Counted from the first letter of the stretch, positions 17,124 to 64,000 are shown. The stretch: DNA of 64,000 nt from Haliotis rubra (GCF_003918875.1 NW_025766002.1:7254001-7318000); one strand, 5' to 3'. Numbers and translations are program-made. The notes: generated by a model from the sequence alone, not told the origin.

Positions 17124-17640
17124 TTGGTTCAATTCCGCTTTGAATGCTAGTATTACATCAGCATAGTCTAAGAGGAAAGTGATGCCGGTATTAGACATTT
17201 ACCTCTTTGATGCCACCCATGATCACAGGTACTGTGATGACAAACCTGGAAACATAATCGGCTCGAACTTGGATTCGAACCAATTATTGGACAGTCATAG
17301 GTTGACCAAGGGGCGCAACTCTGTACAGGGGCCAAACGTGCCCCAGAGTACGTGAATGGTTTGAAAATGTTTCCCTTATATTAGCTTGGTGTGAGAGATA
17401 CCCGGACAATAAGGAGTGGTATCATGGCTGCAGATTCACGGCGGCAGGAAACTAGTGTTGTAGGCAACTAACTAGCAACTAACTAAACTGACCACGCCAC
17501 AAAACCATTTCAACCCTGGTTCAGATAACATAAAACAGAGTCGGCATTGTTTGTGTTTGCTAATTTTGCAATCACTTTGCTTTATTTAAACACTTCGAAC
17601 AGGCAACATCCAGTCAAAAGTCGTCCATCGTACGAAGCCT

Positions 17641-20600
17641 CTATTTCGCTGTAAATAAAACAAACAAACAAACATCAAACGATGCCTGAAACACCTTGTA
17701 AATAAAGACGAATTACTTAATTTTCGATAGCACCCTGAATACACATACACACACGCACGCACGCACACACATAGATTTCTATCTAACTATGTTATATAAA
17801 TTGTGAACATAAGTGTTATTTTTAAAGAAAAATATAAGGTCGGTTTCGTACCAATTACAGGTGGAATGCAATAAATAATCACATCACATCAAGGGTTGGG
17901 GGTCAAAATAGACAGAAGCATGATGTCTACACATTATTCTTTTTGATGTGCCAAATGCTATGTTTTCCTCATTTGTGGATGAACAGATATTTAACGAGGA
18001 AAGTATTCAACCACCTTGTATAGTCAAGAGGCGTTCGAGATTTCAACACGCCTTTCGACCAGCATGAAATGTATAATAATTGCAGTGACGACTTGTATCA
18101 AAATTTACTTTAGTAAAGACAACCCAGTTGTTGAATTTCAAAATGTTGGCATTTACCTGGTTCGTAAGCTTCCTCTCCCATCCAGTTACCCCTGGAACAT
18201 GAAGTAAAATATTTTATGTCTTAGACGGGATTTTGTTGTTGTGACAGAATGTATCATTGAAGGGCACTGCACGTGAATACACCAAAGGCATGAAATAAAA
18301 GGAACTAATAATATGAATGTCGCTATTGTTTAGGAGGACGTTCACAATACAATGGCGTTGCATCTGAATGCAAGATCTAATATTTCACATCACACAACAC
18401 AGTGCGTATTACACGTTTAGAAAAGAATCCAAGTGTGTGTACTTCCACCATCGAAATCATGTCATCAGTTTCAATCTGAGGGTAGTACATGTATTCTGAT
18501 TATCAGACATTGACCATTTTTAATGAAAACATGATCTCGAGTTACATGACCCAGTCACTTTCTGTAGGCTGAAACGTTGAACTCACTATTTTGTCATGGT
18601 TACCCAATGAGTCGCTGCTTGCAAAACACCAACACTGGAATCTGTGGGTCGTGAATGACCACACACGGACAGGCAGATTAAAGTGTAAATACTTACCTGG
18701 GCTCATAGTAACACACCAGGAACCGTACGTCATTGTAACCTTGGAACTGAGACATATAGGGGCAGTTATTCATTGCACAGCCAAATTCCCGAGTATCCTC
18801 CCAGTTGACCTAGATGAGACATCCATTATTTAGACGTTGCACTGATAAGAATATCGAAAATGATAACGACAACGCCACGTTCAATATTGAGCATTTTGTT
18901 TTTAAATGACCATCAAGTAGTGATGATACCAACTGTAAGTAAAAAGGTGGGTAAATCCTGGTATCCGGGGTGAACACATGCAAAGGCAAGGTAATTATTC
19001 ACCTGAAAATAAGATCCACAGAGATACACAGGGCCAATCACTAAAGGGGTTTGAACTACAAGGTGGTGTCCAATCTGAAATATCCTCCATATTTCTATTG
19101 TTTACAAAACTATTCTGAAGCTTTTCATCGAACGACATGTGCACAAGAGTGGCATGACTCTCTTTGAACTCATCATGCAAAGAGCATGCGCCCTCGGACA
19201 TCAAGAGTTGTGACATCAATGACTGGAACTGGGATTCTGAGCAACAAAAAAGGGAATCCTGACCATTGAAATTTTGAACTCCCTCCTCTTTTTTGAAACA
19301 TTTTGTCAGCCTAAAATTTTATGCCTAGAACTAAATTCTAATTTCTAATGTGTTTCGAAACCTATCTTTCTTAAATTTAGTTTTTAAATTTTAAATTTTA
19401 AAAAGAAAACGAACGTCAATGAACCGACTTAGATGAAATGCATGTCCTGGTTGAGAAATAGCTGAATAACGTTGTTATTCGACGTATCCTCCACTTGTCA
19501 GTATTGGAGCACGTGTCCGACAGATAATGATTTTTATGCTCTACCCACGGTGTCACGATTACAGGTAATCATTCAGACAACACTTTGTTACCATTTGTGA
19601 CTCGGCATACTGGGTCTTTGAATAGGGGACAACAGGGAGACGGTTAAGGAAAGCCACGTGAAATATGAAGGCGCTTGATTTTGTTTCAGGGTGATAAAAA
19701 AGGTGAAGCGACTTCCACTTTGAGTGAGTGAGTGAGTATGGTTTTACTCCGCTTTTAGCAATATTCCAGCAATATCACAGCGGTGAACGACAGAAATGGG
19801 CTTCAAACATGTACCCATGTTGGGAATCCAACGCGGATCTTCGGCGCGACGAACGAACGCTTTATATTAACCACTACTTCCACTTTGAAGGCACATGATC
19901 CTAAATAGTTGGAACAAGATATTTAGTACGCATTTCACTGCAATATTTACACCATGTCAGATTTGTATTAGAAAACAGCTGCTGGAAGTCGATCATGGAA
20001 CATGGAAATACCTGATAAAATGTATCTATGAGGGGTCATTGTGTGAAACCAATGTTTTTGGTACAATGTCTGACATATGTCCGCCTCCGTGGTGTAGTTG
20101 TTAGAGCGTCCGCCCGGAGAGCGGAAGGTCGCGGGTTCGATGCCCGACCGCGTCATACCAAAAGACGTTAAAATATGGTACTTGTTGGTCCCTGCCTGGC
20201 GCTCGGCATTAATGGATACAACAAGGACTGGTCGGCTCGGAGTCAGTATAATGTGTCTGAGTGGGGTATTCATGCTTCACTGCGGCATGGTATCTCAGTG
20301 GGCTAGCGCTATAAAACCAGCTTAAGTCTGGGCTAGTACAAGCAGCCGCACATACACATACACACGCACGCACGTCGTCATATGAGCGAAATATTCTCAA
20401 GCACGACGTAAAACCCAATTTCACCTCACCTCACCTGACATATATTTTCAGGATCTGCTATTTGGAATTTGGCGAGAATATATACAGTGCAAAAGTATTC
20501 GCAATGTTTCAAGATACACTGATCGCATAACTATACTGACATCTGAAAATGGATAACTACGACGATCTAGAACGGCTTTGTACTGAGTCTGCCATACCGT

Positions 20601-21903
20601 GTGATGCTGTCTCATGCATATTAATGTCAACATGTGTATACCTCTTATTCGCACAACAAAATAAACAAACTATGCGTTGATAAACCAAAACGAAATGCTC
20701 TGAGAAAAATATATAAGTAGACATCTTTGTAAAACCTATACGATAAACATGAATGCATGTACCTTCAATCATCACAGATGTAGAAAGGGGTTGTAAGAAC
20801 CCAAAAAATCAATCTGAAATCTGTTTAGCCAGATTTGTGAACATCAGACAGTGTTTACACCAAGTGTTCACAAATAACTTAAAGTTACCTGTGAGTAATA
20901 GCAGCTCTGGGAAGGAGAGCATTGTCTGTCATTGTAGCGGAATGAGTCGACCCCGTTCCTCCAAGCGTTAAAGCCTCTATTCATGAACTCTTCCTCCGAT
21001 CGGGACGACTGCTCAATGTAGAGGTTCTCGCCGAAGTCAGGTCTTGATGAATATCTGAACTCACATCTGTTTGCATATCTCTGGGCTTCTCTTGCTAATT
21101 CTTCGTTCCATCTCTGCAACAAACAGTATTTAAGCTTAAGAAGCAATTTGATTTATCTACGAGACCAATGCCAATATGTCTAAATGCTTACAAGATTGTA
21201 GTTGGGCTTATAATTTCGTACAACAGTATACATTTGATAATTGACTTGAAATATAACAAATGCGAAAAGAATGCACAGCAAGTAATATGTTCTTGTATTG
21301 ACAAAATTAAAAAACTGCTATTTTGTTTGACAACATGTCTCCAAATGTTTCCGTTGTGGTAATTGGTACAGTTCATTAATTTCCTTTCAGGAAGTGCATG
21401 GAAATTCCATCTCATTGTTTAATGCAGACATTCAGTTTGTGTCTACTTAACATAAAGGGAACACTATAACCTCTTATCTCTCCGTCCAACACTCTGTTAG
21501 TTCAAGCAGCATCCACATNNNNNNNNNNNNNNNNNNNNNNNNNNNNNNNNNNNNNNNNNNNNNNNNNNNNNNNNNNNNNNNNNNNNNNNNNNNNNNNNNN
21601 NNNNNNNNNNNNNNNNNNNNNNNNNNNNNNNNNNNNNNNNNNNNNNNNNNNNNNNNNNNNNNNNNNNNNNNNNNNNNNNNNNNNNNNNNNNNNNNNNNNN
21701 NNNNNNNNNNNNNNNNNNNNNNAGTTTCAACTACTCACGAGAAAGGGATAGCTTTCCTCTCCGTACTCATTAGGGAACTCTCCCTCATCCATCATCTGGC
21801 GTCCCTCGTTGTGAAGTTGAAGCATGATGTTCTGATATTCTGGCATCATTACATTCGCCATGGAGACGCCCAAGACGCCCAGAAAAAGTACGGTCCACAT
21901 CAT
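17641..21903 (-). CDS. Secreted CAP (SCP/PR-1/CRISP-domain) protein, copy 1, 181 aa
   Basis: Exons 21903-21739, 21113-20889, 18809-18697, 18191-18157, 17648-17641, all GT-AG with compatible phases 0,0,2,1. MMWTVLFLGVLGVSMA signal; HNEGR; LRWNEELAREAQRYANRC; GENLY; CYYSQVNWEDTREFGCA; FLVCYYEPRGNW; ends EAYEPAK*. AATAAA at 17586-17581. Confidence 0.9.
19721..19875 (-). mobile_element. tRNA-derived SINE, family A, in CAP copy 1 intron
   Basis: (gagt)n tail plus gcttttagcaatattccagcaatatcac...; flanked on both sides by acttccactttga (candidate TSD). Confidence 0.8.
20079..20434 (+). mobile_element. Young tRNA-derived SINE, family C (Meta/MESC-like core), 9-bp TSD
   Basis: A/B boxes tggtgtagttgttagagc / gggttcgatgccc; core gtcataccaaaagacgttaaaatatggtac..ccctgcctggcgctcggcatta; (tcacc)n tail; TSD ctgacatat at 20070-20078 and 20435-20443; empty site in copy 2 near 34158. 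Confidence 0.85.
21519..21722. other. Assembly gap (N run) in CAP copy 1 intron
   Basis: Run of n. Confidence 1.
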
Positions 21904-23664
21904 TGTGATATTGGAAGATCTGTCAACGTCATAAAAATAGATTTCTTAACTTTTACTGTTCCTGTAATATTTGTAATTATCAGCTTTACGCGAACCCCTC
22001 CTCTCACTAATCTTTGCTACTGATATACACATGCTTATGCACTAATCGTAATCGGTTACATCTGTATATTTTATCTGACGTGAAACATTGAAATATGAAG
22101 TCCTCCATGGAGATAAACTGTTATCATTCTGTACCATAAACATCTCAGTATACAAGTATGTTGTATGCTCATTAAATATAACGTATCTATACAGATATTT
22201 ATGTAATGTAGGGATCTTTTTAGAAATACCAGGAAAACTCTTACTTACAATTTCATTTTGAAAACAAAATGAGTGTAGGCTATTCCGTGTGTAAAACCAT
22301 CATGCGTCCAAAATTATGTTATGAATAAAACTACACAAATTTATACACGTTTTCTATCATAATAATGCTCCAGGTAGGTACATATGAATCTCTACGCCCC
22401 AAAATAGTATAGACTGAAGTAATCATGCAAACGTTATATAAATGTACTTAATAAATTATAATCAGTGTTTTAGAATGCGAGAAAATAAAATTGTGTTAGC
22501 TGAAGGAAAGTAAGACGAAGCCATACAGTTATCAAGGCTGAAACTACTAGTGTTGGTTGCCTGGGTCTGTATACATATAAATGTCACAATATGAAACTGT
22601 ATATAGGAAATCAAAATATATATTGGAACTGGATATAAAAGTCACAAAACGAAACTGTACATAAGGAATCAAAATATATATTGGAACTGCATGTTTACAT
22701 AAATACAGATGTAAACAGTAAACACTGAATTAAACTGAATATTGAACAACCCTGCCTCTGATATCACTTTCCGCCTATTACGGCTTAGATTGAATGTTTC
22801 GTCAGAAGGTCCATTTCAACATTTCCAAACTATGTATATTAGTTATTGTATGAAAATCTTCAAACATATCCAGTTTGTATTTAGTGAAAAGATCAATCTT
22901 TGATAATTTATCTCCAAATGTCTAAATTGAAAGACAAAGGATTATTTCATTGTATGAAAAACTTGTATTCATGCGAATAGTCACACTATTTTTCTCGTTG
23001 TCTTGTACAAATCAGGAAACTACAGGAATTGACATTTTGGGACATGGCAGTCTGTCTTGTCATTTAATCTCTTAGCCGTCACATATTATTATTATCTATG
23101 GTTCTATGAGAAATATCATACATATGAAAATTGAATAAACAATAAAATACCAAAAATTGGAAACAGTGAGGTATTGTATTCTGTCATTTGTTATAATAAA
23201 ATTTCTGAAATGATTTGCCTCTGTAATGTCATACTTTTACTTTTACTGTTTTTGAAGGACGTTCAATCTATTGCTTACACAATTGGGCTACTTTTGCACT
23301 ACGTTAAATCATGAATTATTGAATTATTTAGAGAATATCCATTATATCAAACTGCACAAATGAATTTTGAGGTTGTCCCTGTTAAGTTAGTTTTACAAAA
23401 TTTGGAGCTCCCATCTCAACTGAACGAAAATGTTCAATTGTTACATTGCCCATAGGTAGGTGTATCAACCAGATTGATCTAAAAACGATTTACATATATT
23501 TACAATAAATTACCTCTGACGGTTATTTAGTACAGATGTCAATTGTTATGTTAGATAATTCTAATACTGTTAATATTTTGTGAGAGGGCTAAAAGTTGCC
23601 AAATATGTGCCCAGTCCCAATAAACAATGTCAAAATGAAAGTCGGACATCATACATGTTCTTAC

Positions 23665-23731
23665 CTCAAGGGAGCTGATTCCACTGTTTGAAGACTTGAG
23701 TGGGCCTGCCTGTTGAAGCCCTTCTTATATA
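23665..23731 (-). promoter_or_regulatory. TATA box and short non-coding leader exon of CAP copy 1
   Basis: Minus strand TATATAAG (23731-23724) ... CCCTTGAG|GTAAGA donor (exon end 23665); matching acceptor ttgacag| 16 nt before the ATG; spacing identical in four copies. Confidence 0.75.
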
Positions 23732-25066: not shown

Positions 25067-25943
25067 ACAACCCATTTTACGATTCTGACTGTTGTGTTTG
25101 TGAATCACGATCAAATAGTAATAATGCTGATGGCGCTGTAGTAAACACACGCAAAGGAAAGGAAATAGTTTACTTCGGAAAACAAAAATATGGGAAAATA
25201 CTATCCTGAATGTGAAAATTCATCGGATATAAATTTGACCAGTAAAATCTGGGTTAACCTTTAATGTATCATGTGAAACGAATACTGACTCTGTAATAAC
25301 ACATGCAAAGGCAAAGAAATATTTTACATCGAAAATATAAAACATAGGAAAAATATATACGATCTGTAAACATTCATTGGACATAATGTTGACCTGTGAT
25401 GCCTAAAAGTGTGTTAACCTTTATGTATCATGTGAAACGAATACTTTGACATCCTTGTGAGTTTGTATAAAACGAGATTTGTATTATATTTGTTTACAAA
25501 AGGTTTCGACATAATGAAAGGATGGAAGTCCCATGGGGAAATCAACATCAGTGCATTTAAGAAATGACAACTCTGAGTAGGGGGAGCATTTCTTGTCACT
25601 GAAGTGGAACGTATCTACCTTGTTTAAATATGCGGTAAAATGTCGGCTTTCAAACTTTCGATCGAGAAGAGGTTATGATAACAATATAGAGGTTCTGAAC
25701 GCACTTATGTTTTGCTTTAACACATAGCAACTTCCGTGTGAGAATCTCATAGCAAATGAAATAACTAGTCGGCTCAGATCTGATGCAAATGAAATAACCA
25801 GTTGGCGAAAGTCTTATGACTCCTCGTTTAAAAACATATCTCATAGTTGTGAAATAGTTACACTCCAAAGACCGAAGCTCAAGAAATATTACTCAACTTG
25901 AATTAAAGGTTATACTATCACTCGTGCCATACTGTAATATTAG

Positions 25944-31629: not shown

Positions 31630-32184
31630 GGCTCAGCCTCGATTCTGCAAACCCCATAACCATTGGGTTAATATATTTCGTTTAAACTAAGCATCTTTGA
31701 CCTGTAATTTCTCGACCCATGAAGATCCGGGTTAGAAGCGAGTAATGGGATCGGGTGGTCAGGCTCGCCTACTTGGTTGATGCAGGCCATCGAATCTCAT
31801 TTGCGTAGATTGATGCTCATTATTTTTATCACTAGACAGACAGGTGGAGACAGATTATTTACAGACCGTCGTCATGTAGATGGAAAACTTGTGAATGCAG
31901 TGTTCCGCATAGTAAAAACTAACAAACACAAAACGTGCAAGAGATCTAGAGAGTATTTCGAACATGAAGTGGCATCACGGGCGTCCGATTCACGGCTGCA
32001 GGAGTGTTGTAAGCAACTAACTAGGGCTAAACTGACCTGGGCACAAACCCTGGTTCAGATAACATAAAACAGAGTCGGCATTGTTTGTGTTTGCTTCTTT
32101 TGCAATCACTTTGCTTTATTTAAACACTTCGAACAGTCAACATCCGGTCGAAAGTCGTCCATTAGTATCCATCCTACGAAGCCT

Positions 32185-35100
32185 CTATTTCGCTGTAAAT
32201 AAAACAAACAAACAAACATCAAACGATGCCTGAAAGACCTTGTAAATAAAGACAATTTTCTTAATTTTCGATAGCACCCTGAATACACATACACACACGC
32301 ACGCACGCACTCACATAGGTTTCTATCTGTCTATGTTTTATAAATTGTGAACATATGTGTTATTATTAAAGAATAAAATGAGGTCGGTTTCGTACCATTT
32401 GCAGGTGGGATGTAATAACAAATCACATCACATCAATCACATCAAGGGTTGGGGATCAAAATAGAAAGAAGCATGATGTCGATACATTATTCTTTTTGCT
32501 GTGTCAAATGCTATGTTTTCTCATTTGTGGACGAACAAATATTTAACGAGGAAAGTATTCAACCAGTTTTTATAGTCAAGAGGCGTTAGAGATTTCAACA
32601 CGCCTTTCGACCAGCAGTGAAATGTATAATAATTGCAGTGACGACTTGTGTCACAAATTTACTTTAGTAAAGACAACCCAGTTGTTGAATTTCAAAATGT
32701 AGGCATTTACCTGGTTCGTAAGCATCCTCTCCCATCCAGTTAGCCCTGGAACATGAAGTAAAATATATTATGTCTTGGACGGGATTTTGTTGTTGTGACG
32801 GAAAGTATTGATGGTCACTGGAAGTGGAATACACCAACGGCATGAAATAAAAGGAACTAATAATATGAATGTCGCTATTTTTTAGGAGGACGTTCACAAT
32901 ACCATGGCGTTGCATCTGAATGCAATATCTAATATTTCACATCACACAACACAGTGCGTATTACACATGCAGAAAAGACTGTGTACTTCCACCATCGAGA
33001 TCATTCCATCAGTTCCCTTCTGAGGGTTGTACAATGTACATGTATTCTGATTATCAGACACGGACCATTATTAATGAAAACATGATCTCGAGTTACATGA
33101 TCCAGTCACTTTCTGTGGGCTGTAACATTGAACTCACTATTTTGTCATGCTTACCCAATGAGTCGCTGCTTGCAAAACACAAGCACTGGAATCTGTGGGC
33201 CGTGAATGACCACACACGGGCAGGCAGATTAAAGTACAAATACTTACCTGGGCTCATAGTAACACACCAGGAACCGTACGTCATTGTAACCTCGGAACTG
33301 AGACATATAGTTGCAGTTATTCATTGCACAGCCAAATTCCCTAGTGTCCTCCCAGTTAACCTAGATGAGACATCCATTATTTAGAAGTTGCACTGATAAG
33401 AATATCGAAAATCATAACGACAACACCACGTTCAATCTTGAGCATTTTGTTCTTAAATGACCATCAAGTAGTGATGATACCAACTGTAAGTAAAAAGATC
33501 AAACTCCTGCCACTGCGATGGTATCTGGGTTGAACACATGCAAAGGCAAGGTAATTATTCACCTGAAAACAAATTCACAAAGATACAGAGGGCCAATCAA
33601 TAAAGGGGTTTGAACTACATGGTGGTGTCAAATCTGAAATATCCTCCATATCTATTGTTTACAAAACTATTTTGAAGCTTTTCATCGAACGACATGTTCG
33701 CAAGAGTGGCATGACGCTCTTTGAATTTATAATGCAAGGAGCATGCACCCTCGTACATCAAGAGTTGTGACATCAAGGACTGGAACTGGGATGCTGAGCA
33801 ACAAAAAGGGAAACCTGACAATTGAAATTTTGAACTCACTCCTCTTTTTTGAAACATTTTGTCAGCCTAAAATGTTATGCCTAGAACTAAATTCTAATTT
33901 CTTATATGTTTCGAAACCTATCTTTCTTAAATTTAGTTTTTAAATTAAAAATTTAAAAAAGAGAACGAACGCCAATGAACCGACTTAGAGGAGATGCATG
34001 TCCTGGTTGAGAAGTAGCTGAATAACGTTGTTATTCGACGTATCATCCACTTGTCAGTATTGGAACACGTGTCCGTCGATCACGGAACATGGAAATACCT
34101 GATAAAATATTATCTATTAGGGGTCATTGTGTGAAACCAATGTTTCAGGTACAATGTCTGACATATATTTTCAGAAACTGCTACTCGGAGTTTGGCGAGA
34201 ACATATACAATGCAAACGTATTCACAAATGTTTCAAGATACACTGATCGCATAGCTATACTGATAGCTGTAAATGATAACTACGTCGATCTCGAACCATG
34301 ACATGTGTTGCTGTTTCGTGTGTATTAATGACAACGTGTATACCTCTTATTCGCACAACAAAATAAACAAACTATTCGTTGATAAACCAAAACGATATGC
34401 TCTGAGAAAAATATATAAGTAGACATCTTTGTAAAGCCTATACGATAAACATGAATGCATGTACCTTCAATCAACAAAGATGTAGAAAGGGGTTGTAAGA
34501 ACCAAACAAATCAATCTGAAATCTGTTTTGCATGAGTTGTGAACATCAGACACTGTTAACACCAAGTGTTCACAAATAACTTAAAGTTACCTGTGAGTAA
34601 TAGCAGCTCTGGGAAGGAGAGCATCCCCTGTCATCAAAGCGGAATGAGTCGTCCCCGTTCCTCCAAGCGTTAAAGCCTCTATTCATGAACTCTTCTTCCG
34701 ATCGGGACGACTGCTCAATGTAGAGGTTCTCGCCGAAGTCAGGTCTTGATGAGTAACTGAACTGACATCTGTTTGCATATCTCTGGGCTTCTCTTGCTAA
34801 GTCTTCGTTCCATCTCTGCAACAAACAGTATTTAAGCTTAAGAAGCAATTTGATTTATCTACGAGACCAGTGCCAAAATGTCTAAATGCTTACAAGACTG
34901 TACTTGGGCTTACAATTTCGTACAACAATATACATTTGATAATTGACTTGAAATATAACAAATGCGAAAAGAATGCACAGCAAGTAATATGTTCTTGTTT
35001 TGACAAAAATAAAAAAAACTGCTATTTTGTTTGACAACATGTCTCCAAATGTTTCCGTTGTGTGTGTTTTATGCGTGAAACATTGTGAATAGGAGGTCTT

Positions 35101-43259: not shown

Positions 43260-46122
43260 CTATTTCGCTGTAAATACAACAAACAAACATAAAACGATGC
43301 CTGAAAGACCTTGTAAATAAGACAATTTTTGTTAATATTCGATAGCACCCTGAATACACGTAGACACACGCACGCACGCACACATATTTTTATATATCTA
43401 TCTGTATATCTAGATCGCAATTTGTTACGTTTAACCATATATATATATAATGTATGCTTTTCGACCAGCATTGAAATACAAAATAATTACAGTGACGACT
43501 TGTATCAAAATCTACTTCACAGTTGTTGAACTTTAAAATGTTGTCATTTACCAGGTTCGTAAGCTTCCTCTCCCATCCAATTACTCCTGGAACATGAAGT
43601 AAAATACATAATTTCTTAGACGGGATTTTTTGTTGTGATGGAATGTATCATTGAAGGGCCCTACAATTGAAATACACCAAAGGCATGAAATTAAAGGAAC
43701 TAAAACTATGAATGTCGATATTTTTTAGGAGGACGTTTATAATATCATTGCGTTGCATCCGAATTTATATATTTCACATCACATAACACAATATGTACTT
43801 CCACCTTCGAAATCATTTCATCAGTTCCCTTCTGAAGGTAGTACGTGTACTCCGATTGACAAGATCAGACATGGACCATTATTAATGAAAACGTAATCTC
43901 GAATGACATGATCCAATCACTTTCTGGGTGTAGGCTGTGGCGTTAAGCTCAATATTTTGTCATGTTATGGTTACCCAATGAGTCAAACACAAGCACAAAC
44001 ACAAGCACTGGAATCTGTGGAACGCGAATGCCCACACACGGGTAGGCAGATTAAAGTACAAATACTTACCTGGGCTCATAGTAACACACCAGGAACCGTA
44101 CGTCATTGTAACCTTGGAACTGAGACATATAGGGGCAGTTATTCATTGCACAGCCAAATTCCCGAGTCTCCTCCCAGTTGACCTGGATGATAAATCCATT
44201 ATTTAGAAGCTACACCGATAAGAATATCATAAATAAAAACGACAAAACCACTTTCAATCTTGAGCATTTTATTTCTAAATGACCATCAAGTAGTGATGAT
44301 ACCAACTGTAAGTAAAAAGATCAAACTCCTGCCACTGCGATGGTATCCGGGGTGAACACATGCAAAGGCAAGGTAATTATTCACCTGAAAACAAATTCAC
44401 AAAGTCGAAATCACTACCCGTTAGTTTAGATGGTGGTGTCTGATCTGACAAAGGCATCCATACTTCTTTCATGAAGCTGTTCATGAAACAACATGTTCGC
44501 AAGAGTGGCATGAAGCTCTTTGAACTCATCATGCAAAGAACATGCGCCCTCGTACATCAAAAGCTGTGACATCAAAGACTGGAACTGGGTTGCTGCGCAA
44601 CATAAACGAAATGCTGAAAATTGAAATGTTGATTTCATCCTTCTTTATACACAGTCTTGTGGGAACATTACATACTGATAACTGTAAATTGATAATGACG
44701 ACGATCTGGAACGACTTTGTACTCAGTCAGCCATGCCGTATGATGCTGTTTCATGTGTATTAATGTCAACATGCGTATTCCTCTTATTCGCTGAACAAAA
44801 TAAACAAACTAAGCGCCATAACATGTATAAACGACAGCAAATGCTCTGAGGAAAGTTATACAATTATACATCTTTGTAACACCTATGCGATAAACTTGAA
44901 AACCTTCAACCATCAAAGATGCAGAAAGGGAATGTAAGTATAAAAAAAATCAATCTGAAATCTGTTTAGCCAGATTGTGTTTATGAATCAACATCAGACA
45001 GCGTTAACATAAAGTGTTCGCAAAACACGTATCGTCAGTCCTGCCGCACGTGTAATGTAAGATAAGTTTGTATGCAACATAATGAAGCGTAAGAAGGAAC
45101 CTTGGATTCCCAACAATACCTGTGAGTAATAGCAGCTCTGGGAAGGAGAGCATCCCCTGTCATTGTAGCGGAATGAGTCGACCCCGTTCCTCCAAGCGTT
45201 AAAGCCTCTATTCATGAACTCTTCCTCCGATCGGGACGACTGCTCAATGTAGAGGTTCTCGCCGAACTCAGGTCTTGATGAGTATCTGAACTGACATCTG
45301 TTTGCATATCTCTGGGCTTGTCTTGCTAATTCTTCGTTCCATCTCTGCAACAAACAGTATTTAAGCTTAAGAATCAATTTGATTTATTCATGAGACCAAT
45401 GCCAATTTGTCTAAATGCTTACTAGACTGTGATAGGGCCTACATTTCGTACAACAATATACATTTGATTTGGACTTGAAGAATAACAAATGCGAAAATGC
45501 TGGGAGGTAACATGTTGGCTGACAAAACAATAACTTATATTTTCTTAAACAACATTTTATCAATTTCCTTTCAGGAAGCGCATGAAAATTTCATCTCATT
45601 GTTTAATGTATTCAGCAAAACATGTATGTGTCTCCTTAACTTAACGAGAAAGCTACAACCTCTTACCTACCCGACCGACACTCTGTTCGTTCAAGCAGCA
45701 TCCACATCAAACCATCCACGCACGCTCACACGCATACACGCAATCAAGCATACATGACTACATTCATACATCTTGAAAGCTGCCGTAAGCTCCATTACTC
45801 TTCATGTGAAATACATGTATTTCAATGATTCAATGCTGCAGATTGTTGACAGATTCGTAAAGCTGCGAGTGATAACGGTTAAAGAAAAAAAGAAACTATA
45901 AACAGATACGTCACTCAATCAGCATTATTTTGAAATGATTTGTATAAAGACATGCATACACACGAGATAGTTTTCCTCTCCGAACCCATTAGGGAAATCT
46001 CCCTCGTTCATCATCTGGCGTCCATCGTTGTGTAGTTGAAGCACGATGTTCTGATATTCTGGCATCATTACATTCGCCATGGAGACGCCCAAGACGCCCA
46101 GAAAAACTACGGTCCACATCAT
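43260..46122 (-). CDS. Secreted CAP protein, copy 3, 179 aa
   Basis: Exons 46122-45964 (2-codon deletion; weak donor gtgtgt), 45344-45120, 44182-44070, 43586-43552, 43267-43260; frame open throughout. Confidence 0.88.
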
Positions 46123-47381
46123 TGTGATATTGGAAGATCTGTCAACGTTATGAAAATATATATTTCTTAACATTTACTGTGCCTGTATTGCAGTCGAATA
46201 AGTGAATTAATCCTTCAGTTATCATTATTTTAATTAGCTCGGACACACCATGCAATTACTTAACATTGTTTACACAGGATCCTCGTAAATCGGTTCATAG
46301 CAAAAAACGTGTGAGTGCAACTCATCACTGTATAGTTGAAATTTCGCCGAATCAACGTGAAATGTTACCCTATTCACATGAAACGGAGAGCGAATTTGGT
46401 TATCTGAATAATACCAATCAAACGCCTTACCCCATTAATTTGATCGATGGCAGCCATTTGCGAAGTCAAAACTTCTATATGGTACTTGCCTTATTATTCA
46501 TCAAATTCTAAAATGCCAGTCAAACAGATGACTGCTGAGCTTAACATTATGCCATCTATGCAGTTACATACATATATGGACAGCATCTACACAGTATCCC
46601 CACAGAAGAGACAACCATTCCGATTTATTCCGCTTTAGACCCGTATAACGTCGGATTCTTGAGAAAAACCGTGATGTTTGACATTTAACACTAAATTCGG
46701 AAATATTCTAGGTAGGCATGAACACGAACTGAGGTTTTGAGCAACGCATGTTAAGGCTTTTGAACCTACAAACTCTTTGTCTACATTTCATTATGACACA
46801 CATACCAGTGAAAACCTCCGTTACTTCTGCATGTATACTGAGGGGAACAAATAAGGGAACACCACTTGTTATCTCTCCCGTTGTTCTCTCCCGAAACTAC
46901 TGGAATTGACATTTTGGGACATGGCAATCTGTCTGGTCACTTAATCTCTCAAAAATTATTTATGGCCCTATAAGAAATATCATACATATGAAAACTGAAT
47001 AAACAATAATACACCGAAAACTGAAAAGCTCATATTTTTTTAGTGTGGTTGAAGGAAGTTCAGTTTATTGCTTACAAAAATACGTTACTTTTGCACTATG
47101 TTAAATCATGAATTATATAGAGAATATTCATGAAACTGCACAAATGAATTTTGAGAATCCTTTTCTTTCTTCTTGAATTGAATAAAATCTGTTTAAACCA
47201 CATATATTTATATTAAATTACCTGTGGTGGTTATTTTGTACAAATTTCAATTGTTATGTTAAATAATGCTAATACTGCTAATAGTGTTAATATTTTGTGA
47301 GAGAGCTAACACTTGCCAAATATGTGCCCAGTCCTCAGAAACAATGTCAAAATGAAAGTTGGACATCAAACATGCTCTTAC

Positions 47382-47448
47382 CTCAAGGGAGCTGATTCCA
47401 CTGTTGGAAGACGTTCGTGGGCCCGCCCGGTGAAGCCCTTCTTATATA
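47382..47448 (-). promoter_or_regulatory. TATA box and leader exon of CAP copy 3
   Basis: TATATAAG at 47448-47441; GAG|GTAAGA donor at 47382. Confidence 0.75.
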
Positions 47449-52678: not shown

Positions 52679-52878
52679 NNNNNNNNNNNNNNNNNNNNNN
52701 NNNNNNNNNNNNNNNNNNNNNNNNNNNNNNNNNNNNNNNNNNNNNNNNNNNNNNNNNNNNNNNNNNNNNNNNNNNNNNNNNNNNNNNNNNNNNNNNNNNN
52801 NNNNNNNNNNNNNNNNNNNNNNNNNNNNNNNNNNNNNNNNNNNNNNNNNNNNNNNNNNNNNNNNNNNNNNNNNNNNNN
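52679..52878. other. Assembly gap (N run)
   Basis: Run of n. Confidence 1.
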
Positions 52879-53616
52879 CAGTTTAGATACGGTGCTTATG
52901 ACTACTTATGTATATCGGAATTACACATGTTCGTGAGCAAGAAATCTAATTCTCCAAAGCTCTCACTGTATCCCTCAGCTGGCTGTTTCGATTCTCCAAA
53001 CTCATAACCACAGGCTAGGATTAATATATTTTGTGTGAAATAAGCATCTTTGACCTGTATCTCTTTGTAATTTTCTCGACCTGTGACGATCCGGGATGGA
53101 ATTGGCCTTAATGCTTGTCGTAAGAAGCGATTAATGGGATCGGGTGGTCAGACTCGCTTACTTGGTTGATGCAAGCCATCGAATCCCATTTGCGTAGATC
53201 GATGCTCATTATTTCTATCACTAGATAGTCTGACGGATACAGATTATTTACAGACCGTAGTTATGTATTCTGAATTGTACAAACTAACAAACAAAAAACG
53301 CGCACAAGAGATCCAGACAAGAACTTGAAGTGGTATCACCGGCCTCCGATTCACGGCTATAGGAGTGTTGTAAGCAACTAACTAGAACTGGACACCTGGG
53401 CACGAAATAACCTGACCTTGGCACGCACTAAACTGACCGTGCCACGAACTAGACTGATCATGCCACAAACTCGATTCAACCCTGGTTCAGATGACATAAA
53501 ACAGAGTTGGCATTGTTTGTGGTTGCTACTTTTGCAATCACTTTGCTTTATTTAAACACTTCGAACAGGCAGCATCCGGTCGAAAGTCGTCCATTATTAT
53601 CCATCCTACGATGCCT

Positions 53617-56119
53617 CTATTTCGCTGTAAATAAAACAAACAAACATAAAACGATGCTTGATAGAGCTTGTAAATGAAGACGAATTCCTTAATTTTTGAT
53701 AGTATCCTGCCACATTGTATAGTCAAGAGGCGTTCCAGATTTCATCACGCCTTTCGACCTGCAGTGAGATACATAATAATTGCAGTGACGACTTGTATTA
53801 AAACTTACTTATGTAAAGACAACAGTTGTTGAATTTCAAAATGTTGACATTTACCTGGTTCGTAAGCATCCTCTCCCATCCAGTTACCCCTGAAACATGA
53901 AGTAAAATACATTATGTCTTGGACGGAATTCTGTTGTTGTGATGGAATGTATCACTGAAGGGGGCTGCAAGTGAAATAAACCAAAGGCATGAAATAAAAG
54001 GAACTAATGATATTAATGTCGTTATTATTGAGGAGTACGTTCACAATACAATGGCACTGAATCTGAATGCAAGATCTAATATTTCACATCACATAACACA
54101 GTGACGTATTACACATGCAGAAAAGAAGCCGAAGTTTATGTACATCCACCATCAAAATCATTTCTTCAGTTCCCTTCTGAGGGTAGTACATGTATTCTGA
54201 TTATCGGACATGGACCACTACTAATGAACAAACAATCTCGAATTACTTGATCCAGTCAATTTCTGTAGGATGTGGCGTTAAACTCACTTTTTTGTTATGG
54301 TCACCCAGTGAGTCGCTGCATGCAAAACACCAACACTGGAATCTGTGGGCCGTGAATGACCACACACGGACAGGCAGATTAAAGTACAAATACTTACCTG
54401 GGCTCATAGTAACACACCAGGAACCGTACGTCATTGTACCCTCGGAACTGAGACATATAGGGGCAGTTATTCATTGCACAGCCAAATTCCCGAGTCTCCT
54501 CCCAGTTGACCTAGATGAGACATCCATTTTAAGACGTTACACTGATTAGAATATCGTAAATGATAACGACAAATAGCCGTTTTGTCCACTGGAATCTTGA
54601 TCTTGTTTCCGGTACAATGTCTGACATCTATTTTCAGAAACTGCTACTCGGAGTTTGGCGAGAAAATATACAATGCAAATGTATTCACAATGTTTCAAGA
54701 TACACTTATCGCATAGCTATACTGATAGCTGTAAATGATAATTACGACGATCTCGAACCATGACATGTGTTGCTGTTTCGTGTGTATTAATGTCAACATC
54801 TGTATACCTCCTAGTCGCAGAACAAAACAAACAAACAAACTTTTTGCCTAAACTTGTATGAACCACAACAACTGCTCTGAGGAAATGTCAAAGAAATATA
54901 TAATTAGACATCTTTGTAAAACCTATACGATAAACATGAATACCTTTAACCATCAAAGGGGTTGTAAGTACAAGAAAAAAATCAGTATGAAATCTGTTTT
55001 GTATGATTGTGTTTATGAATCAACATCAGCCAGTGTTAACACCCAGTGTTCGCAAAACACTTAAAGTCAGTCTTGCCCCACGTGTAATGTAAGATAATTT
55101 TGCATTAGATGTTATAATATAGTTTCCACAAAATATGAAACGTTAGAAGGAACCTTGGATTCCCAACAATACCTGTGAGTAATAGCAGCTCTGGGAAGGA
55201 GAGCATTGTCTGTCATCGAAGCGGAATGAGTCGACCCCGTTCCTCCAAGCGTTAAAGCCTCTACTCATGAACTCTTCCTCCGATCGGGACGACTGCTCAA
55301 TGTAGAGGTTCTCGCCGAACTCAGGTCTTGATGAGTAACTGAACTCACATCTGTTTGCATATCTCTCGGCTTGTCTTGCTAATTCTTCATTCCATCTCTG
55401 GACAAACAGTATTTAAGCTTAAGAATCAATTTGATTTATTCATGAGACCAGTACCAATATGTCTACATGCTTACTGGACAGAACTTGGGGATACAATTTC
55501 GTACAACAATATACATTTGGTTTTGACTTGAAGTATAAGAAATGCGAAAATGCTGGGAAGTAATATGTTGGCTGACAAAAAATAAACTTTTTTTTTTCTT
55601 AAAAAACATTTTATTAATTTCCTTTCAGGAAGTGCATGAAAATTTCGGTATGTGCCTCCTTATCATAGCGCGAACGCTATAACTTCTTATCTACCCGACC
55701 GACACTCTGTTCGTTCAAGCAGCATCCACACCATTCCATCCATGCACACCCACACGCATACATGCATACATTCGACCTTAAACTCCATTACTCTTCATGT
55801 AAAATATTTGAATGATTCAATGCTGCAGATTGTTGAAAGATTTGTAAAGCTATGAGTGATAATCGTTAAAGAAAGAAAAAAAGAAAATATAAACATATAA
55901 GTAATCCAATAAGCATTATTTTGAAATGCTTTGTGTACTGTCATGAATACTCACAACAAAGGCATAGTTTTCCTCTCCGTACTCATTAGGGAAATCTCCC
56001 TCGTTCATCATCTGGCGTCCCTCGTTGTGAAGTTGAAGCATGATGTTCTGATATTCTGGCATCAATACATTCGCCATGGAGACGCCAAAGACGCCCAGAA
56101 AAACTACGGTCCACATCAT
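53617..56119 (-). CDS. Secreted CAP protein, copy 4, 181 aa
   Basis: Exons 56119-55955, 55397-55173 (not in the ORF track: RWNEELARQAERYANRCEFSYSSRPEFGENLY...FDDRQCSPSQSCYYSQ), 54510-54398, 53889-53855, 53624-53617; canonical splice sites. Confidence 0.9.
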
Positions 56120-57883
56120 TGTGATATTGAAAGATCTGTCAACGTCATGAAACCAGATTACTTAGATTTGTTTATTTTTGGCATCACTTCACACCGTTGG
56201 CGTACGATACCACACAATTACCAAACATTGTTAGCACAGGATCCTCGTAAACCGGCTCACAAGAAAAACGTGTGCCTGTCTGAATCAAATCACCACTGTA
56301 TAGTTGAAATTTCGTCGAAGCGACGTGAAATTATACCCTATTCACATGAAACGGAGAGCGATTTTGGTTATGTGAATAATACCAAAATCAGTCGCCTTAC
56401 ACCGTTAATTTGATCTATGGCAGCCATCTGCGAATTTAAAAGAACCCTAAACAAAATCTAGTCACACCATACGGTTATATGACGGCTTTCTTTAAATGAC
56501 CGAGTCTAGACCAGGCACTGCTGAGCTGATGACAAGTACGATACTTTATGGATGGCAACTTCTTTATTTTATTATGATGCTTGATACCGCTGTCAGGCAC
56601 CAAAATAGTATAGACTGAAGTAATGATGCACAGGTGATGGCAATGCACTATTATAATTATAATCAATGTTTTAGAATGCGGGAAAATGAAAAGGAAAGGA
56701 ACGTTTATCGAATAAACAGACAATAAAATTGTGGCAACAAAAGGAAAGTGAGACGAAGGTATCAAGGTAGAAGCTACAAGTGTTGGTTGCCTGGGTCTAT
56801 ATACATGTAAACGTCACAAAATGAAACTGTATATAGGAAATCAAAATATATATTGGAACTGTATATCTACTTAAATACACAGTAAGAACTAAATTAAATT
56901 GAATATTGAGCTGCCCTGCCTCTGATATCACTTTCCGCCTATTAAGGTTTAAGTTGAATGTTTTTCTCAGAAAGTCCATTTCGACATTTCAAATGTATGT
57001 ATATTAGCTATTGTATGAAAATCTTCAAACACACCATGTTTGTATTTAGAGAAATGTTAATTTGTTGATAATGTATCTTCAATACTAACGTCTAAATCGT
57101 CAAACAAAGGATTACATTTCGTTGTATAAAAATAGTTAAAATATCAAACTTGTATTCAGGCAAATAGTCAAACTTGTTATCTTTCCCGTTGTCATGCCTA
57201 ACTTGTACAAACCAGGAAACTACTGGAATTGACATTTTGGGACATGGCAGTCTCTCTTGTCATTTAATCTCATAGCCGCCACACATTAATTATTATTTAT
57301 GGCCCTATAAGAAATATCATGCAAATGACAATTGAATAAACAATAATATACCGAAAATTGAAAACAGTGAAATATCGCATTCAGTCATTTTTTCTTTTGA
57401 AATAAAATTTCTGAAATGATTTCCCCTGTAAATCAGGGAATCCAGTACGTTAAGCTCATATACTAACTTTTAATGTTGTTGAAGGAAGTTCAGCGGATTG
57501 CGTACAAAGGAATGCTACTTTTGCACTAAGTTAAATCATGAATTATTTTGAGAATATCCATTAAACTGCACAAATGAATTTCGAGAAAACGAAGGTGCCC
57601 CTCTTAAGTCGGTTTTACAAAATGGGAGCTCCCATCTCAACTAAACCAAAATGTTCAATTGTCACACTGTCTATGGGTAGATGTATTAACCAGATTGATC
57701 TAAAAAGATCTAAATATATTTACAATAAATTACCTGTGATGGTTATTTTGTGCAGATGTCAATTGTTATGTTTAAATAATGCTAATACTGTTAACGGTTT
57801 GTGAGGGGGCTAAACGTTGCCAAATATGTGCCCAGTCCTAACAAACGATGTGAAAATGAAAGTCCGACATCACACGTTCTTAC

Positions 57884-57950
57884 CTCAAGGGAGCTGATTC
57901 CACTGTTCGAAGACGTTCGTGTGCCTGCCTATTGAAGCCCTTCTTATATA
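57884..57950 (-). promoter_or_regulatory. TATA box and leader exon of CAP copy 4
   Basis: TATATAAG at 57950-57943; GAG|GTAAGA donor at 57884. Confidence 0.75.
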
Positions 57951-60507: not shown

Positions 60508-60636
60508 NNNNNNNNNNNNNNNNNNNNNNNNNNNNNNNNNNNNNNNNNNNNNNNNNNNNNNNNNNNNNNNNNNNNNNNNNNNNNNNNNNNNNNNNNNNNN
60601 NNNNNNNNNNNNNNNNNNNNNNNNNNNNNNNNNNNN
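60508..60636. other. Assembly gap (N run)
   Basis: Run of n. Confidence 1.
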
Positions 60637-63220: not shown

Positions 63221-63367
63221 CTCAATTCAACTTTGGTTCAGATAACATAAAACAGAGTTGGCATTATTTGTGTTTGCTACTTTTGCAATCACTTTGCTTT
63301 ATTTAAACACTTCGAACAGGCAACATCCGGTTGAAAGTCATCCATTATTATCCATCCTACGAAGGCT

Positions 63368-63938
63368 CTATTTCGCTGTAAATAAAACAAACAAACATAA
63401 AACGATGCTTGATAGACCTTTGTTAATGAAGAAGAATTCCTTAATTTTTGATAGTATCCTGCATATACATACACACACGCAGGCACACGCATATGTTACT
63501 ATGTATCTATATGTCTATCTATCCATCCATCTACATCTATAGCTTCTTTATATGAATGTGAACATATGTGTTATTCCTAATGAATAAAAATGAGGCACGG
63601 GACACTGTCGGTTTCCTACCAATTGCAGGTGGGATGCAGAGAAAAAAATCACATCACATCAATCACATCAAGCGTTGGGGGTCAAATTAGAAAGATGTCT
63701 ATACATTATTCTTTTTGCTGTGCCAAATGCTATGTGTTCCTCACTTGTGGACGAACAGATATTTAACGAGGAAAGTATTCAACCGCCTTGTATAGTCAAG
63801 AGACGTTCCAGATTTCATCACGCCTTTCGACCAGTGAAATACATGATAATTGCAGTGACGACTTGTATCAAAACTTGTTGAATTTCAAAATGTTGATATT
63901 TACCTGGTTCGTAAGCATCCTCTCCCATCCAATTACCC
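63368..63938 (-). CDS. Secreted CAP protein, copy 5 (last two exons only; gene continues beyond the window)
   Basis: Exons 63938-63904 (GNWMGEDAYEP; acceptor aag) and 63375-63368 (AK*). Confidence 0.8.
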
Positions 63939-64000
63939 CTTAAACATGAAGTAAAATACATTATGTCTTAGACGGAATTTTTTGTTGTGATGGAATGTAT

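What the first reader, a model, noticed from the sequence alone, without database searches (positions are those of the whole stretch)
17412..64000. Tandem array of at least 5 secreted CAP genes that have lost the canonical His-Glu-Glu-His tetrad
Seen: five units (stop-to-stop spacing 14.5, 11.1, 10.4 and 9.8 kb), each encoding a signal peptide plus one CAP domain with six Cys and no CRISP C-terminal domain. The usual C-x-F-x-H-S reads C[EQ]F[RS]YSS, C-G-H-Y-T-Q reads CYYSQ, and W-x-x-E reads WRNG; only the GENL Glu survives. Known: these residues form the metal-binding cleft of PR-1/GAPR-1/CRISP proteins. Inference: an amplified, metal-independent CAP subfamily with a Tyr-lined cleft, needed at high dosage, for ligand binding or a structural role in a secretion.
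Basis: partly seen in the sequence, partly recalled or inferred. Interest (0 to 1): 0.72.

Follow-up and report, generated by a model that had tools for sequence, protein, structure and literature searches.

The report
Abalone tandem array of tetrad-less CAP genes
This stretch of blacklip abalone DNA holds part of a ten-unit tandem array of small, secreted, abundantly transcribed CAP (PR-1-like) genes that lost the family's metal-binding His/Glu residues after copying from a normal neighbour gene; it is a real, young gene family of unknown function, not a new kind of system.

Summary
The window is Haliotis rubra DNA. On the minus strand lie four complete genes and the last two exons of a fifth. 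Each has a 5'UTR exon plus five coding exons and encodes a 181-aa protein: signal peptide, one CAP domain, six Cys, no CRISP tail. Stop-to-stop spacings are 14.5, 11.1, 10.4 and 9.8 kb, as reported. RNA contigs support every splice junction of unit D, with very high depth. RefSeq already models these genes under generic CAP names.

The whole array has ten units over about 110 kb, at least seven intact. All read Tyr-Glu-Gly-Tyr where the flanking paralogues and 55 of 56 nearest outside relatives keep both His. H. asinina has a sister array that lost the fourth residue too.

The tetrad loss is part of a wider shift: Lys 8-10 to 1, His 5-6 to 1, Tyr and Met up. dN/dS is 0.6-0.8 against 0.16 for the parent gene.

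Metal-independence is well supported by sequence. High dosage is plausible. The actual role is untested: ligand binding is my preferred reading, with matrix and recognition roles as rivals. Tetrad-less CAPs are known in helminths. Interest is moderate.

The parts
23665..23715 (-). Unit A, 5'UTR leader exon (5' end approximate)
   Evidence: Same sequence as the RNA loose end in unit D. The donor is AG|GTAAGA, and TATATAAG lies about 59 nt upstream of the donor.
21739..21919 (-). Unit A exon 1: 16 nt of 5'UTR, ATG at 21903, signal peptide, start of the CAP domain (HNEGR)
   Evidence: Equals residues 1-55 of P0005.
21519..21722 (.). Assembly gap inside intron 1 of unit A
   Evidence: Not filled.
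20889..21113 (-). Unit A exon 2: CEFRYSS, GENL, AWRNG, CYYSQ
18697..18809 (-). Unit A exon 3: FGCAMNNC, aromatic loop, LVCYYEP
18157..18191 (-). Unit A exon 4 (GNWMGEEAYEP)
17550..17648 (-). Unit A exon 5: last 2 codons, TAG at 17643-17641, 3'UTR with AATAAA at 17586-17581 (3' end by homology to unit D)
37488..37538 (-). Unit B leader exon (5' end approximate)
35386..35565 (-). Unit B exon 1. One base is missing after LHN as assembled, which causes a frameshift.
   Evidence: An RNA contig with 5 G is, table 7.
34591..34815 (-). Unit B exon 2
33248..33360 (-). Unit B exon 3
32711..32745 (-). Unit B exon 4
32084..32192 (-). Unit B exon 5, stop at 32187-32185
47382..47432 (-). Unit C leader exon (5' end approximate)
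45964..46138 (-). Unit C exon 1 (in-frame 6-base deletion at its 3' end, GTGTGT donor)
45120..45344 (-). Unit C exon 2
44070..44182 (-). Unit C exon 3
43552..43586 (-). Unit C exon 4
43159..43267 (-). Unit C exon 5, stop at 43262-43260
57884..57934 (-). Unit D leader exon (5' end approximate)
   Evidence: The RNA loose end at 56137 matches 57886-57903.
55955..56135 (-). Unit D exon 1
   Evidence: RNA joint 55397>55958. Equals P0008.
55173..55397 (-). Unit D exon 2
   Evidence: RNA joints.
54398..54510 (-). Unit D exon 3
   Evidence: RNA joints 54508>55171 and 53888>54397.
53855..53889 (-). Unit D exon 4
   Evidence: RNA joints.
53516..53624 (-). Unit D exon 5: stop at 53619-53617, AATAAA at 53552-53547, poly(A) site near 53516
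   Evidence: Joint 53624>53855 and a T-run loose end before 53516.
63904..63938 (-). Unit E exon 4. Exons 1-3 lie beyond the window, and exons 1-2 are broken there.
63267..63375 (-). Unit E exon 5, stop at 63370-63368
25517..25663 (-). Decayed relic of an exon 2 of the canonical (L-type) paralogue in the spacer upstream of unit A. Similar relics lie at 39419-39538, 48873-48908 and 59206-59259.
   Evidence: tblastn, 39-67% identity.
52679..52878 (.). Assembly gap in the C-D spacer
60508..60636 (.). Assembly gap in the D-E spacer

Best explanation
Shown: this is a real, transcribed tandem array of a Haliotis-specific secreted CAP subfamily. Each gene has a short 5'UTR exon plus five coding exons on the minus strand. 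It encodes a 181-aa precursor: a 16-aa signal peptide and a 165-aa acidic single CAP domain with six Cys. The window holds four complete units and the 3' end of a fifth. The whole array has ten units, at least seven of them intact.

Shown or strongly inferred: the subfamily arose by duplication of a canonical CAP gene that still sits at the end of the array (unit L, tetrad His-Glu-Glu-His, under strong purifying selection). Before amplification the founder replaced the cleft residues by Tyr-Glu-Gly-Tyr. In H. asinina all four are gone (Tyr-Trp/Ser-Gly-Tyr). Nearly all Lys and His were lost across the protein, and Tyr and Met were gained.

Inferred: the protein keeps the CAP fold but cannot coordinate divalent cations through the two cavity histidines that canonical CAPs use. 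I take it to work as an abundant, non-enzymatic extracellular binding protein. The most likely ligands are small hydrophobic molecules (sterols or lipids), bound through the tetrad-independent sites known from SmVAL4 and HpVAL-4 and/or the now aromatic cleft. On this reading copy number was raised for output.

Confidence by step: identity and gene model about 0.95; no canonical metal site about 0.8; ligand-binding role about 0.35.
For: Gene model. RefSeq proteins are identical to the exon translations. RNA contigs cover only the exons, and GT..AG joints fit all four coding introns plus the leader-exon splice. Splice sites are conserved in all units.

CAP identity. Pfam PF00188 matches 1-117/117 at 43-48 bits against a cut-off of 21.1. 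The AF2 model has pLDDT 78 and pTM 0.76. Foldseek gives TM 0.72 to GLIPR1, with PR-1, SmVAL4 and BmVAL-1 as further top hits.

Tetrad loss. A gap-free 181-column alignment with L-type paralogues shows Y/E/G/Y against H/E/E/H at columns 76, 84, 109 and 127. HMMER alignments to GLIPR1, Sol i 3, Ves v 5 and BmVAL-1 place Tyr opposite both cavity His and Gly opposite Glu. BmVAL-1 H86 and H150 are the metal ligands (PMC5893361). Of the 56 nearest non-Haliotis CAP domains, 55 keep both His.

Single origin next to the parent. Units K and L and an upstream paralogue keep the tetrad. The tetrad-less clade has 100/100 support. H. asinina shows the same layout.

Directional change. Five of six Lys columns invariant in the L-type are replaced (p=0.002) and three of four His columns (p=0.035). 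Twelve to thirteen of the 28 fixed replacements are to Tyr or Met.

Constraint. Reading frames, six Cys and splice sites are kept in at least seven copies and in two species. dN is about 0.3 of intron divergence.

Expression. Summed word depth on the exons is 2,000-53,000 in three small RNA-like runs, and about zero in the introns. A-, B- and H/I/J-type variants are all present.

Precedent. Tetrad-less CAPs that bind sterol and palmitate are SmVAL4 (PMC4118828) and HpVAL-4 (PMC5893428).
Against: No binding or metal assay exists.

The tissue of the RNA runs is not disclosed, so the secretion is unknown.

Contig depth is a poor measure of expression.

dN/dS of 0.6-0.8 is also what relaxed constraint or a recognition or defence role would give.

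The Lys/His purge and Tyr/Met gain are not explained by sterol binding.

The sterol-binding loop was judged only by eye (aromatic residues in CPYMSQFQGYNDVRF). Model coordinates could not be inspected, so 'Tyr-lined cleft' rests on positional homology.

Copy number comes from a 30x Nanopore hybrid meta-assembly (PMC6774278). Pairs E/F and H/I have almost identical intron 3 (distance 0.006), so each pair is either a very recent duplication or an assembly duplicate of one copy.
Confidence: 0.5

Rival explanations
1. Matrix or structural protein. On this reading the family is an abundant Tyr-rich acidic component of a secreted matrix (shell organic matrix, periostracum, mucus or egg coat). The CAP domain serves as a building block, and Tyr serves for mineral contact or dityrosine/DOPA chemistry.
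For: Composition is 8-13% Tyr with pI 4.6-4.9. The mRNA is very abundant. Fast evolution and tandem amplification would fit secreted matrix proteins (my own knowledge). CAP-domain proteins SCP1 and SCP2 are quantified constituents of the Lottia gigantea shell matrix (PMC4094399). RefSeq names unit B 'SCP domain-containing protein 1-like'.
Against: The Lottia SCP proteins are basic (pI 9.2-9.6) and carry long disordered N-terminal extensions, unlike these compact acidic proteins. From my own knowledge, quinone tanning relies on Lys and His nucleophiles, which are purged here. There are no repeats or low-complexity regions. I found no abalone paper reporting such a protein.
Confidence: 0.2
2. 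Recognition or defence protein under diversifying selection. On this reading the family acts through protein-protein contacts (gamete interaction, immunity, or a deterrent), as CRISPs and venom allergens do. Amplification serves diversity rather than dosage.
For: dN/dS is 0.6-0.8 between species against 0.16 for the parent gene. Paralogue pairs reach 1.0-1.5. Species-specific clades imply repeated turnover or homogenisation. Several paralogue types are co-expressed.
Against: Paralogues within a species are 90-93% identical, which offers little diversity. The changes are compositional and shared by all copies rather than copy-specific. There is no ion-channel-regulating Cys-rich tail. No site-specific test of positive selection was run.
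Confidence: 0.15
3. Functionless drift. On this reading the tetrad loss marks loss of function, and the array is a set of redundant, decaying duplicates.
For: dN/dS is elevated. Unit E is a clear pseudogene, and one unit has lost exons 2-5 (orphan exon 1). Relic exon fragments lie in every spacer.
Against: At least seven copies in H. rubra and eleven annotated proteins in H. asinina keep open frames, six Cys, the signal peptide and splice sites. Replacement is directional towards Tyr and Met, not random. RNA depth is very high. dN is well below intron divergence.
Confidence: 0.06
4. Assembly inflation. On this reading most 'units' are uncollapsed haplotypes or mis-assembled repeats, and fewer than five real genes exist.
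For: The genome is a 30x Nanopore hybrid meta-assembly with haplotig purging and RNA-guided scaffolding (PMC6774278). Three N gaps lie in the region. Pairs E/F and H/I have intron distance 0.006.
Against: Most unit pairs differ by 12-17% in intron 3, and by indels of hundreds of bases in intron 2 (662-2079 bases), which is far more than I would expect between alleles. RNA contigs carry at least three paralogue-specific letter combinations. H. asinina, assembled independently to chromosome level, has a comparable array.
Confidence: 0.04

Closest known systems
Canonical neighbour gene, 'L-type' CAP (H. rubra XP_046566973.1 = unit L; orthologues in H. asinina, H. rufescens and H. cracherodii)
   Same: Same locus and strand, same exon structure, same length (181 aa, gap-free alignment), same six Cys and signal peptide; 59-71% identity.
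   Different: It keeps His-Glu-Glu-His. It has normal composition (Lys 8-10, His 5-6, Tyr 6-7, Met 1-2), appears once per species among the proteins retrieved, and has dN/dS 0.16.
SmVAL4 (PDB 4P27) and HpVAL-4 (PDB 5WEE), helminth CAP proteins without the tetrad
   Same: Secreted single CAP domains that lack the cavity histidines. Both are structural matches to the model. They show that a tetrad-less CAP can still bind sterol and palmitate (PMC4118828, PMC5893428).
   Different: Only 16-22% identical, with independent loss of the tetrad. They come from parasites. No Lys/His purge is reported for them. Lipid binding is untested for the abalone proteins.
GLIPR1 (3Q2R), plant PR-1 and GAPR-1, prototypical single-domain CAPs
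   Same: Best sequence and fold matches. The CAP3 (HNEGR) and CAP4 (GENL) motifs are present in H. rubra.
   Different: These bind Zn2+ or Mg2+ through the two His that are Tyr here. The PROSITE CAP1 pattern is not met.
Lottia gigantea shell-matrix SCP domain-containing proteins 1 and 2
   Same: Gastropod secreted CAP-domain proteins, and the source of the RefSeq name for unit B.
   Different: Basic pI and a long disordered N-terminal region. Their tetrad status was not examined here. They were not among the close relatives (the next representative outside Haliotis is at most 38% identical).

Membership tests
CAP superfamily (Pfam PF00188) | Match to the CAP domain profile above the gathering score | tested here: met
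   P0005 scores 45.4 bits, P0008 43.3 and P0009 48.5 against a cut-off of 21.1, over profile positions 1-117/117. The L-type scores 69-71 bits. Exon 2 alone reaches only 21-22 bits.
CAP superfamily (Pfam PF00188) | Alpha-beta-alpha sandwich fold | tested here: met
   The AF2 model has pLDDT 78.3 and pTM 0.76. Foldseek gives probability 1.00 and TM 0.72-0.74 to GLIPR1; 54 PDB matches have E<=0.001, and all those listed are CAP proteins.
CAP superfamily (Pfam PF00188) | CAP3 (HNxxR) and CAP4 (G[EQ]N[ILV]) motifs | tested here: met
   HNEGR and GENL are present in all H. rubra units. CAP4 reads GWNF or GSNF in H. asinina.
CAP superfamily (Pfam PF00188) | [quoted passage not shown] | tested here: not met
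   The sequence reads C-Y-Y-S-Q-V-N-W-E-D-T and fails at positions 1, 2 and 7. The pattern is as quoted in PMC5893361.
CAP superfamily (Pfam PF00188) | [quoted passage not shown] | tested here: not met
   The sequence reads F-L-V-C-Y-Y-E-P-R-G-N-W and fails only at position 5 (Tyr). The L-type paralogues share this Tyr.
Prototypical metal-binding CAP (PR-1 / GAPR-1 / CRISP cavity) | His-Glu-Glu-His tetrad in the central cavity | tested here: not met
   Y76, E84, G109 and Y127 in H. rubra; Y, W/S, G and Y in H. asinina. The only His in the mature protein is in HNEGR.
Prototypical metal-binding CAP (PR-1 / GAPR-1 / CRISP cavity) | Binding of Zn2+ or Mg2+ | not testable with these tools
   This needs recombinant protein.
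CRISP subfamily | C-terminal hinge plus Cys-rich (ion-channel-regulating) domain | tested here: not met
   The protein ends 14 residues after CAP2. It has six Cys in total, and the stop codon is confirmed by RefSeq models and RNA joints.
Tetrad-less lipid-binding CAPs (SmVAL4 / HpVAL-4 type) | Absence of the cavity histidines with the CAP fold retained | tested here: met
Tetrad-less lipid-binding CAPs (SmVAL4 / HpVAL-4 type) | Aromatic caveolin-binding-motif loop and sterol or palmitate binding | tested here: inconclusive
   The loop CPYMSQFQGYNDVRF carries four aromatic residues and is conserved between the two species. No motif scan or binding assay was possible.
Secreted protein | N-terminal signal peptide | tested here: inconclusive
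   MMWTV[LV]FLGVLGVSMA|N has a hydrophobic core and small residues at -3 and -1, judged by eye. No predictor was available. A TATA-like box upstream of the leader exon argues that the upstream in-frame ATG of some RefSeq models is not transcribed.

The most novel reading that the evidence does not exclude
The loss of the two cavity His may be a by-product of a protein-wide removal of nucleophilic side chains: Lys falls from 8-10 to 1 and His from 5-6 to 1, while Tyr and Met rise. On this reading the CAP scaffold has been rebuilt into an 'electrophile- and oxidant-proof' secreted protein. Such a protein could work at very high concentration in a chemically aggressive milieu, for example oxidised algal phenolics, halogenating oxidants, or a tanning secretion. 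It would act either as a scavenger or binder of reactive small molecules or as a Tyr/Met redox buffer. It would be a natural case of composition-level adaptation within one locus, with the unmodified parent gene next door as a control.
Probability: 0.12. Interest if true: 0.75.

Novelty: new member of a known kind. Interest (0 to 1): 0.5.

Why it matters
The biochemical role of the conserved CAP cavity is still debated. This locus offers a natural before-and-after pair. A canonical, slowly evolving CAP gene sits beside about ten recent descendants that replaced the tetrad, in two abalone species, and are transcribed at very high level. Comparing the two proteins for metal binding, sterol or lipid binding and structure would show directly what a CAP domain does without its tetrad. 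Finding the secreting tissue would assign a function to one of the most abundant transcripts in those samples. The Lys/His purge is an unexplained and testable compositional signal. For genome annotation, the locus shows that several RefSeq models carry a doubtful N-terminal extension and that one apparent frameshift is probably an assembly error.

Tried and rejected
Last-exon model. I first took an ORF conserved in units B-E and disrupted in unit A (RNRGFVGW...CSKCLNKAK, e.g. 32109-32192) for the last coding exon. RefSeq proteins and RNA joints show that the real exon 4 is the 35-base GNWMGEEAYEP exon. Exon 5 contributes only two codons before TAG, so that ORF is 3'UTR.

First structure prediction. 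AlphaFold2 with 13 close homologues gave pLDDT 36 and was discarded. A 69-sequence alignment gave a usable model.

Literature. Eight searches and targeted reading of abalone genome, mantle and proteome papers found no description of this family.

Tissue. The tissue of the RNA runs is coded and could not be learnt.

Earlier scan notes. A word search of them gave nothing.

Joined spliced model. I built no joined spliced model of my own for any search. Exons were searched by reference, and the full-length queries were RefSeq proteins returned by the tools. dN/dS was summed exon by exon. Unit C, unit K and the upstream paralogue therefore do not appear in the protein tree.

N gaps. They were not filled or looked up.

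Not run. The third word search and a protein-atlas search were not run because they would not change the verdict.

Full report
**What is in the sequence**

A self-comparison shows that 17.4-64 kb is a head-to-tail segmental duplication with units of 10-14.5 kb, 74-98% identical in long blocks. Minus-strand ORFs carry a signal-peptide exon (MMWTV...), an exon with C[EQ]F[RS]YSS ... GENL ... AWRNG ... CYYSQ, and an exon with FGCAMNNC ... LVCYYEP. These occur at four places in the window.

The word search returned eight Haliotis rubra RefSeq proteins in one 90% cluster, all from one 9.43 Mb contig. P0005 (XP_046566977.1, 181 aa) is identical to the exons of unit A. P0008 is identical to unit D. 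P0004 matches unit B from an internal Met. The window is therefore blacklip abalone, contig position 7,254,001-7,318,000. Assembly size and contig count match the published Nanopore hybrid assembly (PMC6774278).

I built no joined spliced model of my own. Exons were searched by reference, and the full-length queries were these RefSeq proteins.

**Gene model**

There are five coding exons. In unit A they are 21903-21739, 21113-20889, 18809-18697, 18191-18157 and 17648-17641 (ending in TAG). A short 5'UTR exon lies 1.3-1.8 kb upstream.

Contigs of three RNA-like runs were laid on unit D. They cover only the exons and show GT..AG joints at 53624>53855, 53888>54397, 54508>55171 and 55397>55958. 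They also show a splice from 56137 to the leader exon, and a T-run marking a poly(A) site near 53516. Summed word depth is 2,000-53,000 on exons and about zero in introns. A DNA run covers every bin.

**State of the units in the window**

- Units A and D are intact.
- Unit C has an in-frame 6-base deletion and a weaker donor in exon 1.
- Unit B lacks one base in a G run of exon 1. One RNA contig carries the 5-G, in-frame version (table 7), and a B-specific letter is abundant in the RNA. I therefore take the frameshift for a homopolymer undercall, but cannot prove it.
- Unit E has only exons 4-5 in the window. Its exons 1-2, outside the window, are broken.

**The assembly gaps**

The gap at 21519-21722 lies in intron 1 of unit A, 10 bases after the donor. 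The flanks are colinear with the other units, and the estimated size fits their introns. Continuity across the gap itself is not known. The other two gaps are intergenic.

**The whole array**

A search of the genome and of 188 kb around the window finds ten tetrad-less units, A-J, over about 110 kb, all on the minus strand. Seven are intact as assembled: A, C, D, F, H, I and J. Unit B is probably intact as well. Unit F uses an exon 1 that lies 17 kb upstream, apparently the orphan of a unit that lost its other exons.

Beyond unit J lie two paralogues that keep the canonical residues. Unit K reads CQFKHTS, GENL, WWDEV and CHYSQ. Unit L reads CQFKHSS, GENL, AWWNEV and CHYSQ, and equals XP_046566973.1. 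A third canonical paralogue lies about 18 kb upstream of the window. No match at E<=0.001 lies on any other contig.

**Is the tetrad really lost?**

Tetrad-less and L-type proteins align over 181 columns without a gap. At columns 76, 84, 109 and 127 the L-type has H, E, E and H, while the array has Y, E, G and Y.

HMMER alignments to GLIPR1, Sol i 3, Ves v 5 and BmVAL-1 put the two Tyr opposite the cavity His and the Gly opposite the Glu of W-x-x-E. BmVAL-1's H86 and H150 are the published metal ligands (PMC5893361).

The mature protein has one His, in HNEGR.

Among the 56 nearest non-Haliotis CAP domains, 55 keep both His (43 HEEH, 11 HQEH, 1 HQQH) and one has lost the first His.

The domain is still a CAP domain. 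Pfam gives a full-length match at 43-48 bits. The AF2 model has pLDDT 78, and its Foldseek top hits are GLIPR1, PR-1, SmVAL4 and BmVAL-1.

**Origin and evolution**

H. asinina has eleven annotated proteins of the same type, with at least two of the genes adjacent in tandem, about 94 kb from its own L-type gene. There the last Glu is gone too (G[WS]NF).

L-type orthologues appear once per species in H. rubra, H. asinina, H. rufescens and H. cracherodii among the proteins retrieved. The word search found no tetrad-less type in the last two species. That is absence from annotated proteomes, not proof of absence.

In the protein tree the tetrad-less clade has 100/100 support. The H. asinina subclade also has 100/100 and the H. 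rubra subclade 83/47. So the loss happened once, before the two species split. Amplification or homogenisation continued separately in each species.

The next relative outside Haliotis is at most 38% identical.

Over the same species split, dN/dS is 0.16 for the L-type and 0.6-0.8 for the tetrad-less type. Among H. rubra paralogues it averages 0.59. Intron 3 divergence (0.12-0.17) exceeds exon dS (0.04-0.12) and is about three times dN. The proteins are therefore constrained, but weakly.

**A wider compositional shift**

Mature tetrad-less proteins have Lys 1, His 1, Tyr 13-21 and Met 8-11, with pI 4.6-4.9. The L-type has Lys 8-10, His 5-6, Tyr 6-7 and Met 1-2.

Of the 125 columns invariant in the L-type, 28 are replaced in every tetrad-less sequence. 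These include five of six Lys columns (p=0.002) and three of four His columns (p=0.035). Twelve to thirteen of the 28 became Tyr or Met.

**How it most likely works**

Shown: a secreted-type precursor, a CAP fold, no canonical His pair, abundant transcripts of several paralogues, and moderate constraint.

Inferred: no cation binding in the cavity. I favour an abundant non-enzymatic binding protein for small hydrophobic ligands. This is by analogy with SmVAL4 and HpVAL-4, which lack the tetrad and still bind sterol and palmitate (PMC4118828; PMC5893428). It also fits the aromatic loop conserved between the two species.

Rivals are a matrix role, a fast-evolving recognition or defence role, functionless drift, and assembly inflation. 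CAP proteins do occur in the Lottia shell matrix (PMC4094399), but those are basic and have long extensions.

None of these readings explains the Lys/His purge. I record the purge as the most interesting open point.

**Comparison with what is known**

This is a member of the CAP superfamily by profile and by fold. It fails the PROSITE CAP1 pattern and the tetrad test, so it is not a prototypical metal-binding CAP, and it is not a CRISP.

Tetrad-less CAPs are known, and the genes are already annotated under generic names. I found no paper on them.

Verdict: a new member of a known kind, of moderate interest.

Noticed in passing
window 25517-25663, 39419-39538, 48873-48908, 59206-59259 (also outside the window, about 72.4 kb on the window scale): Every spacer carries a decayed minus-strand fragment resembling exon 2 of the canonical L-type paralogue (for example DTFRFSDKECSP). 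The amplified unit therefore seems to have contained the remains of a second, older CAP gene.
   Followed up: partly
window 23665-23741, 37488-37564, 47382-47458, 57884-57960, and units H, I, J and L outside the window: RefSeq's 212-aa models start at an in-frame ATG in the leader-exon region. The codons 'LYKK' of that extension are TTATATAAGAAG, a TATA-like box about 59 nt upstream of the leader-exon donor. RNA contigs reach only about 33-49 nt into this exon. The 31-residue N-terminal extension therefore looks like an annotation artefact. Unit B has no ATG there.
   Followed up: partly
window 35454-35460 (unit B exon 1): The assembly has AACGGGGAC (4 G, out of frame). One RNA contig reads AACGGGGGAC (5 G, in frame, Glu to Gly).
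   Followed up: partly
outside the window: G000:C1112:7333232-7350922: Unit F has no exon 1 of its own. The nearest exon 1 with a leader exon lies 17 kb upstream and is used by the RefSeq model P0007. It looks like a deletion that fused two units.
   Followed up: partly
units L, A (this genome) and loci L044, L045 (H. asinina): At synonymous sites the H. rubra L-type gene is closer to the tetrad-less genes (dS 0.22-0.27) than to its H. asinina orthologue (0.30). The H. asinina L-type is far from everything (0.53-0.57). Gene conversion within the H. rubra locus or rate differences could explain this, so the dating of the duplication is uncertain.
   Followed up: no
window 17575-17640, 32109-32192, 43184-43267, 53541-53624, 63292-63375: The 3'UTR holds an ORF (RNRGFVGW...CSKCLNKAK) that stays open in units B-E and is disrupted in unit A. 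It misled my first gene model. It lies after the TAG stop in another frame.
   Followed up: yes
window 6060-7939: A block of internally repeated DNA: many overlapping self-matches at 77-84% identity, with offsets of tens to hundreds of bases. It lies outside the finding.
   Followed up: no
window 26070-27443, 28917-30276 and 39951-41325 versus 60641-61869 (inverted); 25944-28792 versus 28791-31631 (98% direct): The spacers contain a repeated element that is inverted in the D-E spacer. A 2.85 kb local tandem duplication in the A-B spacer explains why that unit is 14.5 kb long.
   Followed up: no
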